A stretch of DNA of 63,939 bases, the filler included, from Octopus bimaculoides (lineage: Eukaryota), in NCBI RefSeq assembly GCF_001194135.2. It is 9 parts of 9 records of this genome, joined end to end, with 100 filler letters (N's around TTAATTAATTAA, not from the genome) between each part and the next. Parts side by side here need not be neighbours in the genome. Positions count along the whole stretch, not along the records: positions 17,701 to 30,475 come from NC_068983.1; 8 more parts are not named here. One strand, written 5' to 3'. A model generated the notes under the pieces. It saw only the letters and a program-made list of their open reading frames with translations, was not told the origin of the DNA and did not search any database. This document shows positions 23,380-23,955 of this stretch, one piece after another. The position numbers and the translations under genes were made by a program. Numbering within the stretch: position 1 is the first letter of the stretch; the number at the start of each line of letters is the position of its first letter.

Positions 23380-23414
<35 letters not shown>

Positions 23415-23955
23415 CGAAGCAGAATTCGCAAAGCGTTGGATTGTTCACCCACTAACGGGGAACGTGAGCTGGGATTAGACCGTCTCTCCGGGACTCTGAG
23501 GGTCCCAGAGAGACGCAACACAACAATACTTGCAACACACGTATGGTGCCTAAAGGACGATCATAAGCCCTTTAACATCAGGTGGAAATTACTAGAAACT
23601 TGTGAACCCAATCGCAATGGAACAAGACTGGGTAAATTGTGTTTGGCAGAAAGATTTATAATTCTCATGAACTCACATGAGCCACGAGGCTACCTTAACT
23701 CCAGGACGGAAGCCGTGGGGAGTTGTCCACATTTTCGGAAATTTTTACTTCAAAATTGGAAAACCTAGCTATCAAGCGAAGGAAGACAACTCGCCCGGCC
23801 ATATTTTTAATGAAGATTGTTTCTTGAATTATCACCAGCGTTCTTGTGTTTCAAAGCAAACGTTCTTTGCAGAGAACGGTTACTGTTTAGAGAAACTGAA
23901 GACATGTGTAGTTCACGCTAGATATGAAACCAATGATTTTTTTCTAAACTTACGT
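22700..23955 (+). mobile_element. Penelope-like element 2, internally deleted (N-terminus fused to post-RT region and GIY-YIG endonuclease; RT core absent)
   Basis: FNIRSRRFPPKFKELEDFEANLLAIIPNLKF..YNRLLENNITQKY joined at about 23000 to IGNIFLRLVDKHF..IFNRHNLRISFSCTPN..CSCR...C...G.C....VYQAKV..YVGSCEFRFKIRLNNHRSSF..LATHVWCLKD..FNIRWKLL..LCLAERFIIL..LNSRTE..CPHFRKFLL; tail has CTGAAGA..GAAAC (23896-23930). Confidence 0.9.
23380..23484 (+). rRNA. 28S: 28S rRNA-derived fragment (non-functional insertion)
   Basis: TTTTGATCCTTCGATGTCGGCTCTTCCTATCATTGCGAAGCAGAATTCGCAAAGCGTTGGATTGTTCACCCACTAACGGGGAACGTGAGCTGGGATTAGACCGTC matches the universally conserved eukaryotic LSU domain V (peptidyl-transferase region) sequence as I recall it, with only a few substitutions. 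Confidence 0.93.

What the first reader, a model, noticed from the sequence alone, without database searches (positions are those of the whole stretch)
23380..23514. 28S rRNA peptidyl-transferase-region fragment captured inside a Penelope GIY-YIG endonuclease, with a fold-back copy of the target
Seen: the endonuclease reads ..RLNNHRSSF (TTT 23380-23382) and resumes RVPERRNTT at 23499. The 116-bp insert is about 105 bp of sense-strand 28S sequence plus TCTCCGGGACTCTG, an inverted copy of the downstream PLE bases (GTCTCTCCGGGAC versus GTCCCAGAGAGAC, a 12-bp hairpin with one mismatch, 23482-23514). Both junctions show microhomology (TTT left, GTC right), there is no TSD, and the insert shifts the frame. 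ORF 23382-23768 reads through the rRNA piece into the endonuclease C-terminus. Established: this is not the R2/R1/R4 28S target region, and RT template switching and polymerase-theta-type repair both produce microhomology-bounded templated inserts with fold-backs. Inference: rRNA was captured either by PLE RT template jumping (then possibly propagated as an rRNA-PLE chimeric family) or by RNA/cDNA-templated repair of a break at this locus.
Basis: partly seen in the sequence, partly recalled or inferred. Interest (0 to 1): 0.8.

Follow-up and report, generated by a model that had tools for sequence, protein, structure and literature searches.

The report
rRNA patch inside a dead retrotransposon
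A decayed copy of a Penelope-like retrotransposon carries a 116-base filler made of about 100 bases of large-subunit ribosomal RNA sequence plus a mirror-image copy of the adjoining break end; this is the scar of a polymerase that hopped between templates, interesting as a clean record of that process but with no sign of function.

Summary
Bases 23380-23484 are sense-strand eukaryotic LSU rRNA from the peptidyl-transferase region (Rfam 102 bits, E 1e-25).

The host is a Hydra-clade Penelope-like element (PLE). This copy is dead: its 5' end is missing, its reverse transcriptase (RT) core is deleted at 23007/23013, and it has frameshifts.

Removing exactly 116 nt (23383-23498) restores the endonuclease frame. 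It also restores colinearity with 60 aligned homologues. Four paralogous DNA copies from Logan assemblies read ...TTC|AGGG... straight across the site, so they are empty there.

The fold-back is a 17-nt palindrome (23481-23497 / 23499-23515, 15/17) around a single extra G. Its axis lies exactly on the right-hand junction, and paralogues indicate it was originally 17/17. Junction microhomologies are TT(T) on the left and CGTC in the middle. There is no target-site duplication (TSD) and no poly(A).

Best reading (about 0.5): a one-off templated patch laid down while a chromosomal break in an already dead copy was repaired, like human class-2 templated sequence insertions.

Main rival (about 0.3): serial RT template jumps on a broken RNA during this copy's own retrotransposition.

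Whether a chimeric family exists could not be tested, because the source genome is not in any collection searched. This is a known kind of event, of modest interest.

The parts
22714..23007 (+). N-terminal region of the Hydra-clade PLE ORF. It matches aa ~42-143 of full-length relatives and is decayed by frameshifts and stops. The DKT motif reads NKT at 22925-22933.
   Evidence: tblastn of 11 full-length (697-762 aa) family proteins against the piece; three-frame translation; motif coordinates.
23007..23013 (+). Junction of an internal deletion that removed the whole RT core (aa ~145-500 of relatives, about 1.07 kb).
   Evidence: Full-length relatives map aa ~42-143 to 22714-23007 and aa ~501-596 to 23013-23276 with nothing in between. 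Paralogues L002, L003 and L009 keep RT C-terminal sequence upstream.
23013..23382 (+). Linker (CxCX5C = CSCRIRNGC, 23178-23204) and the first half of the GIY-YIG endonuclease (TVYQAKV 23235-23255; KIYVGSC 23317-23337; ...RLNNHRSSF ending at 23382). One frameshift lies near 23318.
   Evidence: The endonuclease of relative L001 hits Pfam GIY-YIG at 26.6 bits, above the 22.6 cut-off.
23380..23484 (+). Sense-strand eukaryotic LSU (28S) rRNA fragment from the domain V / peptidyl-transferase region. The unambiguous core is 23383-23480. T's at 23380-23382 are shared with the PLE, and CGTC at 23481-23484 is shared with the inverted copy. Three bases differ from highly conserved consensus positions.
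   Evidence: Rfam RF02543, 102.1 bits, E 1.1e-25, model positions 2875-2965 and beyond; 99.4 bits at the gathering threshold.
23481..23497 (+). Inverted (reverse-complement) copy of the first 17 nt of the right-hand PLE end. This is the left arm of the palindrome.
   Evidence: the repeat finder: arms 23481-23497 / 23499-23515, 88% complementary, 1 nt apart; shuffles; fold. Paralogues indicate it was originally 17/17.
23498..23498 (+). Single extra G at the palindrome axis. It has no template in either arm and is probably a non-templated addition.
   Evidence: Paralogues read TTC|AGGG with no extra base.
23499..23768 (+). Second half of the GIY-YIG endonuclease (RVPERRNTT ... CxxC remnant KLCLAE 23634-23651, CxH = CPH within 23721-23732), running to the natural stop. 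Its first 17 nt served as the template for the inverted copy.
23382..23768 (+). Mechanical 128-aa ORF (TTG start) that reads through the rRNA piece into the endonuclease C-terminus. There is no evidence that it is a gene.
   Evidence: the ORF listing. No Pfam hit.
23885..23949 (+). Hammerhead-ribozyme-like motif in the 3' UTR: GTTTAGAGAAA-CTGAAGA-hairpin-GAAA ... TTTTCTAAAC. It is conserved in paralogues L002 and L003.
   Evidence: Alignment and motif search. The minimum-free-energy fold shows helices I and II. Rfam reports no hammerhead.
23959..24017 (.). (AT)n/(ATAC)n microsatellite at the 3' end of the element. (TA)n is the insertion target described for Hydra-clade PLEs.
   Evidence: Tandem Repeats Finder. 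Homology with L002 ends at 23960. Craig et al. 2021, PMC8557442 section 11.

Best explanation
This is a one-off, non-functional templated patch. It filled a chromosomal break that fell between the Phe and Arg codons of an already integrated, already dead Hydra-clade PLE copy.

The sequence shows four segments joined at three junctions:
- PLE-left joins sense 28S through 2-4 shared T.
- 28S joins a reverse-complement copy of the right-hand end through a shared CGTC.
- That copy runs out to the very last base of the right-hand end, adds one G, and then the right-hand end itself follows.

Inference: the 3' end of the left side of the break was extended on an antisense 28S template (rDNA, or a cDNA of rRNA). 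It then re-annealed by CGTC/GACG 17 nt inside the 'wrong' strand of the right-hand duplex end. It copied out to that strand's 5' terminus, added one base, and turned around onto the complementary strand or was ligated to it.

The mirror-image order gives the same product: the right end is hairpinned and opened 17 nt off-centre, then primes on sense rRNA by GACG/CGUC, then anneals AAA to TTT on the left end.

The polymerase is unknown. Candidates are a Pol-theta-type repair polymerase or a retroelement RT acting in trans.
For: 1. Clean insertion. Removing exactly 116 nt restores the frame and colinearity with 60 homologues. Paralogues L002, L006 and L009 read ...TTC|AGGG... across the site. At most 1 nt of the PLE was lost, as expected for two ends of one break kept in register.
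2. The palindrome axis (G23498) coincides with the right junction, so both strands of a duplex ended there. No shuffle reached 15/17.
3. The palindrome was made from this locus. The left arm keeps CCGG, the state seen in paralogue L002 (CCGGA). The right arm now reads CCAG, a CpG-to-CpA change. The other mismatch is derived in the left arm, since all three paralogues aligned across this site (L002, L006, L009) have AGGG.
4. There is no TSD and no poly(A), but there are microhomologies and one non-templated base. These are the defining features of class-2 templated sequence insertions (PMC5110952).
5. Three substitutions at highly conserved LSU positions show a decaying genomic copy, not mis-assembled rDNA.
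6. No second copy and no other rRNA fragment lie in the 12.8-kb piece.
Against: - About 100 nt copied in trans is, to my knowledge, longer than typical Pol-theta fillers and looks more RT-like.
- The rRNA is in the same sense as the PLE, which an RT model requires and a repair model meets only half the time.
- The same copy carries a second rearrangement, the RT-core deletion, 370 bp upstream. That would fit one messy cDNA synthesis.
- The four empty paralogues are only 69-76% identical, so they do not test this copy's own subfamily.
- No orthologous or allelic empty site could be examined.
Confidence: 0.5

Rival explanations
1. The patch formed during this copy's own retrotransposition. While making first- or second-strand cDNA, the PLE RT met a broken template RNA whose 5' end lay at A23499. 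It ran off, added a base and turned around on the RNA:cDNA duplex end. It then jumped onto 28S rRNA or its cDNA, and jumped back onto the other RNA fragment at ...CAUU(U). The RT-core deletion at 23007/23013 could come from the same error-prone synthesis.
For: - The rRNA is in the same sense as the element, as in 83% of L1/28S chimeras (bioRxiv 10.1101/2025.02.02.635956).
- End-to-end template jumping, non-templated addition and snap-back synthesis are documented for non-LTR-type RTs (bioRxiv 10.1101/2022.03.14.484287).
- A second rearrangement lies in the same copy.
- Divergence since the event is about 5 changes in 136 nt. The endonuclease part shows light decay, with one frameshift and no premature stop in about 640 bp. 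These are compatible with equal age.
Against: - It needs the RNA to be broken exactly here, and both fragments to be used in order with 1 nt or less lost.
- It needs three or four jumps in one synthesis.
- Known retrotransposon-rRNA chimeras carry the rRNA at the 5' end of a truncated element, not inside it.
- No other copy with the junctions was found, though the search space was inadequate.
Confidence: 0.3
2. This is one member of a replicating, non-autonomous rRNA-PLE chimeric family (RT-deleted, carrying the 28S piece) that autonomous Hydra-clade PLEs mobilise in trans.
For: The copy is RT-deleted yet keeps its N-terminal region, its endonuclease and a 3' UTR with a hammerhead-like motif. 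Non-autonomous PLE derivatives are a reported concept (title of bioRxiv 10.64898/2026.07.22.740005, listed and not read).
Against: No second copy lies in the piece. The chimeric ORF is absent from the collection. All four related copies recovered lack both the insert and the RT deletion. This reading is a subset of the previous rival and needs an extra step.
Confidence: 0.07
3. Assembly or sequencing chimera: rDNA reads were wrongly joined into a PLE contig.
For: The piece is a gapped draft scaffold, with N runs at 25395-25804, 27760-28092 and 29412-29674. rDNA is high-copy.
Against: - The same ORF resumes in register on the far side.
- The filler includes a palindromic copy of local sequence.
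- The 28S piece differs from functional rRNA at three highly conserved positions.
- The nearest gap is 1.9 kb away.
Confidence: 0.03

Closest known systems
Class-2 templated sequence insertions / polymorphisms (TSI, TSIP) at double-strand breaks (Onozawa et al.; review PMC5110952)
   Same: A short patch copied from a distant, transcribed sequence. No TSD and no poly(A). Microhomology and non-templated bases at the junctions. Little or no loss of recipient sequence.
   Different: Here the donor is rRNA and the recipient is a dead PLE in an unidentified invertebrate-like genome. The patch also carries a 17-nt palindromic copy of the break end. No empty allele is available.
LINE-1/28S rRNA chimeric insertions (bioRxiv 10.1101/2025.02.02.635956)
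   Same: A 28S segment of 50-482 nt, mostly in the same sense as the retrotransposon. It is attributed to template switching or RNA ligation.
   Different: Those carry the rRNA at the 5' end of a truncated L1 and are flanked by TSDs at L1 endonuclease sites. Here the rRNA is internal, with contiguous element sequence on both sides, and the element is a PLE.
Polymerase-theta / SD-MMEJ snap-back and templated insertions, and the equivalent activities of group II intron-like and non-LTR RTs (bioRxiv 10.1101/2022.03.14.484287; PMC7165422 listed)
   Same: Serial annealing at 1-4-nt microhomologies, inverted copies of flanking sequence, and terminal-transferase additions.
   Different: Classical snap-back copies sequence internal to the annealing point, so it does not give a palindrome running to the very end of the strand. 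The in-trans segment here is long.
Hydra-clade Penelope-like elements (Craig et al. 2021, PMC8557442)
   Same: CxCX5C linker, no CCHH between GIY and YIG, a CxH motif, DKT/YRDD in relatives, a short single-ORF element, and a (TA)n target.
   Different: The window copy lacks the RT core and the first ~40 codons and is frameshifted. Its hammerhead is not recognised by Rfam.
rDNA-specific retroelements (R1/R2 and related; Chlamys PLE-X in Selaginella 28S, PMC8557442)
   Same: They associate a retroelement with 28S sequence.
   Different: The topology is opposite. Those elements sit inside 28S genes, whereas here 105 nt of 28S sit inside the element and no 28S lies outside it.

Membership tests
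Hydra-clade PLE | C-terminal GIY-YIG endonuclease | tested here: met
   The spliced window sequence aligns end to end with family endonucleases. The endonuclease of relative L001 passes the Pfam GIY-YIG cut-off, 26.6 against 22.6 bits. The window's own decayed endonuclease has no Pfam hit.
Hydra-clade PLE | Linker Zn-finger modified to CxCX5C | tested here: met
   CSCRIRNGC at 23178-23204. 8 of 11 full-length relatives have CxCX5C, and 128 of 150 hits have CxCX4-7C.
Hydra-clade PLE | No CCHH motif between GIY and YIG | tested here: met
   Between TVYQAKV and KIYVGSC the window reads AYNGSSTNVNSINANTGNT, with no Cys. Nearly all aligned relatives also lack Cys there; P0004 and P0036 each carry one.
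Hydra-clade PLE | DKT in place of DKG; RWK motif near the N-terminus | tested here: inconclusive
   The window reads NKT (22925-22933), and its first ~40 codons, where RWK lies, are absent. DKT occurs in 10 of 11 full-length relatives and in P0001. RWK occurs in 4 of 11 and in L001.
Hydra-clade PLE | RT domain present (autonomous element) | tested here: not met
   The RT core (aa ~145-500) is deleted at 23007/23013. Relatives carry YRDD. The window copy is a defective derivative, not an autonomous member.
Hydra-clade PLE | Hammerhead ribozyme in the untranslated or repeat region | tested here: inconclusive
   CUGAAGA ... GAAA with predicted helices I and II at 23885-23949, conserved in L002 and L003. 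No Rfam hammerhead match in the window or the loci.
Hydra-clade PLE | Insertion into (TA)n | tested here: met
   The element's homology ends at about 23960, where (AT)22 begins at 23959-24002. The 5' flank is undefined.
Class-2 templated sequence insertion | Insert templated from a distant locus or RNA | tested here: met
   LSU rRNA, 102 bits.
Class-2 templated sequence insertion | No TSD, no poly(A) or cryptic poly(A) signal | tested here: met
   The flanks ...TCTTCATTT and AGGGTCCC... share nothing. The insert ends in ...GGGACTCTG.
Class-2 templated sequence insertion | Microhomology, non-templated bases or microdeletion at the junctions | tested here: met
   TT(T) and CGTC overlaps, an extra G23498, and a possible 1-nt loss (TTC in paralogues against TTT here).
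Class-2 templated sequence insertion | Empty allele or orthologous site exists | not testable with these tools
   Only paralogues (69-76% identity) could be recovered.
Retrotransposon-rRNA chimera by template switching (L1/28S type) | rRNA at the 5' end of a truncated element, with the whole flanked by a TSD | tested here: not met
   The rRNA is internal and element sequence continues on both sides. The orientation criterion (same sense) is met.
rDNA-targeted retroelement (R1/R2, Chlamys PLE-X) | Element flanked by 28S target sequence | tested here: not met
   No LSU match outside 23352-23562 anywhere in the piece when scanned in chunks of 4.7 kb or less.

The most novel reading that the evidence does not exclude
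A Hydra-clade PLE reverse transcriptase made this copy in one error-prone synthesis: an internal jump that deleted its own RT, a turn-around at a broken template end, and a jump onto ribosomal RNA. The resulting RT-less rRNA-PLE chimera is then a mobilisable non-autonomous family. That would be the first record of PLE RT template jumping onto rRNA and of an rRNA-bearing PLE derivative.
Probability: 0.1. Interest if true: 0.55.

Novelty: new member of a known kind. Interest (0 to 1): 0.3.

Why it matters
The locus is an unusually legible molecular fossil. Three template junctions, their microhomologies, one non-templated base and a palindrome whose axis marks the break can all be read. The palindrome's original state can be recovered from paralogues.

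It shows that rRNA-derived templated patches, described mainly in human and yeast, also occur in an invertebrate-type genome rich in PLEs. It also gives a concrete search pattern for a genome-wide survey: rRNA piece, fold-back and no TSD.

It does not reveal a new gene, RNA or mobile-element type. Its wider value depends on whether such patches are enriched in PLE copies, which would implicate the PLE RT, or scattered at random, which would point to general break repair.

Tried and rejected
- **Whole-piece Rfam scans** (12.8 kb) missed the LSU fragment altogether. It appears only when 3.6 kb or less is scanned, so the rest of the piece was rescanned in chunks. Nothing else was found.
- **Pfam** on the reconstructed window protein and on the chimeric ORF gave no hits.
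- **First word-indexed protein search** found only one relative, P0001 from Tara Oceans. The exhaustive representative search was needed to reach the family.
- **Exact look-ups of the chimeric ORF** in four forms (three start positions, and the full-length ORF again with an explicit M) found nothing on record. The 270-aa RT ORF gave the same result.
- **Host identification failed.** The nearby non-LTR RT has no relative above 60% identity. The SRA runs holding the paralogues (SRR11869384-94) are not cited in any searchable paper.
- **Metagenome scan** for the 28S/fold-back junction gave one 20-mer hit (L010) with no 28S context, so it is a chance match.
- **Self-BLAST of the piece** found no second copy of the element.
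- **Simple intramolecular snap-back from the right-hand 3' end** was rejected. It cannot yield a palindrome with a 1-nt centre running to the terminal base.
- **SINE or nested-transposon insertion** was rejected, because there is no TSD, no tail and no terminal repeats.
- **hAT-type excision footprint** was rejected, because no duplicated target remains.
- **rDNA-targeting by the PLE** was rejected, because no 28S lies outside the element.

Full report
**What is at the coordinates**

Bases 23380-23484 are sense-strand eukaryotic large-subunit rRNA.
- Rfam's LSU_rRNA_eukarya model matches 23387-23504 at 102.1 bits (E 1.1e-25, model positions 2875-2984) when 200 nt are scanned.
- It matches at 99.4 bits, well above the gathering score of 50, when 3.6 kb are scanned.
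- By established rRNA numbering this is domain V around the peptidyl-transferase ring (E. coli about 2493-2594). From my own knowledge it lies several hundred nucleotides downstream of the R2/R1 target region.
- Identity starts at TTTT (23380-23383) and ends at GACCGTC (23484).
- Three bases differ from highly conserved consensus positions: AAUAGGG reads AACGGGG and GGGUUUAG reads GGGAUUAG. The fragment is therefore a decaying genomic copy, not functional rDNA.
- Scanning the whole 12.8-kb piece at once missed the fragment. Chunked rescans found no other rRNA piece.

**The host element**

Translation around the insert gives ...KIYVGSCEFRFKIRLNNHRSSF ending at 23382 and RVPERRNTTILATHVWCLKDD... 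from 23499 to a stop at 23768.

An exhaustive HMMER search with the spliced linker plus endonuclease (210 aa) found 4420 representative proteins at E ≤ 1e-3 and 1092 at E ≤ 1e-10. Most of the 150 listed align as one stretch across the splice.

The family matches the Hydra clade of Penelope-like elements (PLEs) as defined by Craig et al. 2021 (PMC8557442, section 11):
- a CxCX5C linker (CSCRIRNGC, 23178-23204);
- no CCHH between GIY and YIG;
- a CxH motif (CPH);
- DKT and YRDD in full-length relatives;
- a (TA)n target: the element's homology ends at about 23960, where (AT)22 begins.

The endonuclease of the Tara Oceans relative L001 passes Pfam GIY-YIG. The window's own decayed sequence does not.

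A hammerhead-like motif (CUGAAGA ... GAAA with helices I and II) sits in the 3' UTR at 23885-23949 and is conserved in paralogues. Rfam does not call it.

**The copy is dead**

Eleven full-length relatives (697-762 aa) map onto the window in four blocks:

| Relative residues | Window coordinates |
|---|---|
| aa ~42-143 | 22714-23007 |
| aa ~501-596 | 23013-23276 |
| aa ~608-629 | 23317-23382 |
| aa ~623-709 | 23508-23762 |

- The whole reverse transcriptase (RT) core, about 355 aa, is missing at a tight junction (23007/23013).
- The first ~40 codons are absent.
- There are frameshifts near 22925, 22950 and 23318.
- Paralogues L002, L003 and L009 still have RT C-terminal sequence upstream. The RT deletion is therefore specific to this copy or its sub-lineage.

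**The insert is clean**

Removing exactly 23383-23498 (116 nt) restores the frame. In a MAFFT alignment of the spliced sequence with the top 60 homologues there is no gap at SSF|RVP.

The closest relatives (P0017, P0004, P0036, P0110) come from Logan assemblies of runs SRR11869384-94. Their contigs are 69-76% identical to the window copy at the DNA level. All lack the insert:

| Sequence | Reading across the site |
|---|---|
| L002 | ...CACAGATATTTC\|AGGGTGCCGGAAAAACGC |
| L006 | ...CCTTTC\|AGGGTGCTTGAGGGA |
| L009 | ...GTTCTTTC\|AGGG-CTGGAGAGACGC |
| window | ...TCTTCATTT[116 nt]AGGGTCCCAGAGAGACGC |

L003/L004 also lack the insert, but their flanking bases are too diverged to read TTC|AGGG across the site. 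The Phe codon is TTC in the paralogues, so at most one PLE base was lost and the left microhomology is 2-4 T.

**The fold-back**

The arms are 23481-23497 (CGTCTCTCCGGGACTCT) and 23499-23515 (AGGGTCCCAGAGAGACG), 15/17 complementary, separated only by G23498.
- The first four bases (CGTC) are also the last four of the 28S piece.
- The palindrome axis therefore falls exactly on the junction that the paralogue alignment defines independently.
- None of 3000 shuffles of 23300-23600 reached 15/17 anywhere. The DNA hairpin is -13.1 kcal/mol, z -4.2.
- Both mismatches are transitions, and paralogues polarise them. Where the right arm has A23507, L002 and L009 have G (L006 reads T there). The left arm preserves that ancestral CCGG, so the right arm suffered a CpG-to-CpA change after the event. 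Where the left arm has T23495, all three paralogues aligned across this site (L002, L006, L009) support the right arm's G.
- The palindrome was therefore most likely 17/17 when formed, copied from this very end.

**What the anatomy implies**

There are four segments and three joints:
1. PLE-left to 28S, through shared T's.
2. 28S to the inverted copy, through CGTC.
3. Inverted copy to PLE-right, with one extra base.

The inverted copy runs to the terminal nucleotide of the right-hand segment. A polymerase therefore copied a strand out to a physical end at 23498|23499 and then continued on, or was joined to, the complementary strand.

A simple intramolecular snap-back cannot give a 1-nt centre. 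A duplex end, DNA:DNA or RNA:cDNA, is required.

Two strand orders give the observed product:
- Left to right: top-strand synthesis primed by ...CATT(T) on an antisense 28S template, then CGTC/GACG annealing 17 nt inside the right end's top strand, run-off, +G, and a turn-around or ligation.
- Right to left: a hairpinned right end opened 17 nt off-centre, then GACG/CGUC priming on sense rRNA, then AAA/TTT annealing to the left end.

These steps are inference. The segments, overlaps and axis are shown by the sequence.

**Which process**

I favour repair of a chromosomal break in the already integrated dead copy (about 0.5).
- The two PLE ends are in perfect register.
- The palindrome marks a duplex end.
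- The junction features (no TSD, no poly(A), microhomology, a non-templated base) are those of class-2 templated sequence insertions, which are thought to use reverse-transcribed RNA as a patch (PMC5110952).

The main rival (about 0.3) is serial template jumping by the PLE RT during this copy's own retrotransposition, on an RNA broken at this point.
- The sense orientation fits. It is also seen in 83% of L1/28S chimeras, whose segments are 50-482 nt (bioRxiv 10.1101/2025.02.02.635956).
- The length of the in-trans segment fits.
- A second rearrangement in the same copy fits.
- The documented jumping, terminal-transferase and snap-back activities of non-LTR-type RTs fit (bioRxiv 10.1101/2022.03.14.484287).
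- Against it: it needs a break exactly here, ordered reuse of both RNA halves, and an internal rather than 5'-terminal rRNA position.

A replicating chimeric family (about 0.07) has no support, but it could not be properly tested. An assembly artefact (about 0.03) is unlikely given the resumed ORF, the local palindrome and the mutated rRNA positions.

**Limits**

- The source organism was not identified.
- The chimeric ORF is not on record in four tested forms (three start positions, and the full-length ORF again with an explicit M).
- A junction scan of metagenome contigs gave only a chance 20-mer.

**Verdict**

This is a new example of a known kind of event, a templated rRNA patch at a break or template end. 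It has unusually readable junctions, no evidence of function, and modest interest.

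Noticed in passing
window 23007-23013: The same PLE copy has lost its entire RT core (about 355 aa, about 1.07 kb) at a tight junction with no obvious filler. 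Paralogues keep the RT C-terminus. It may be an independent genomic deletion or an intramolecular template jump.
   Followed up: partly
window 23885-23949 (also L002 ~1050-1130 and L003 ~1364-1440): A hammerhead-ribozyme-like motif in the 3' UTR: helix I GTTTAG/CTAAAC, CUGAAGA, a helix II hairpin with compensatory changes between copies, and GAAA. Helix III is intact only in L002. Rfam reports no hammerhead.
   Followed up: partly
window 29955-30475 (+), cut by the edge of the piece: A fragment of a second, canonical-type PLE: ...IIVPADKGNATVVM... (a DKG motif) followed by ...YGLPKIHKEGIPLRPIVS...SLDVISLFTKVP. It has no Pfam hit. Calling it a PLE rests on the DKG motif named in Craig et al. 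and on my memory of PLE RT motifs.
   Followed up: partly
window 26421-27233 (+): A 270-aa ORF that is a non-LTR-type reverse transcriptase fragment (Pfam RVT_1, E 2e-13). Its best database relatives are only 60% identical or less and come from marine metagenomes.
   Followed up: partly
window 17701-30475: Methodological point. Rfam cmscan misses the 102-bit LSU fragment when the full 12.8 kb is given, in both evalue and gathering modes. It finds the fragment when 3.6 kb or less is given. Short rRNA fragments can be lost to the filters in large scans.
   Followed up: yes
L002, L003, L006 (Logan contigs): The gene calls behind P0017, P0004 and P0036 read TGA as a sense codon (W). These 'proteins' are read-through translations of decayed PLE copies, not intact genes.
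   Followed up: yes
window 23256-23316; also P0017, P0036, P0004: [quoted passage not shown] Most other family members lack it.
   Followed up: no
L001 (Tara Oceans contig, 2643 bp): The contig holds an endonuclease 3' part, then a spacer, then a full N-terminus-RT-linker ORF. Its first 42 nt recur at 2390 and then diverge. This suggests a partial tandem arrangement or a truncated copy, as is often seen for PLEs.
   Followed up: partly
window 21926-21967, 23959-24126, 25278-25916, 27696-27760, 29300-29740: Dense microsatellites ((AG)n, (AC)n, (AT)n, (ATAG)n) border the assembly gaps (N runs 25395-25804, 27760-28092, 29412-29674). This is a repeat-rich draft scaffold from an unidentified, probably marine invertebrate genome.
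   Followed up: no
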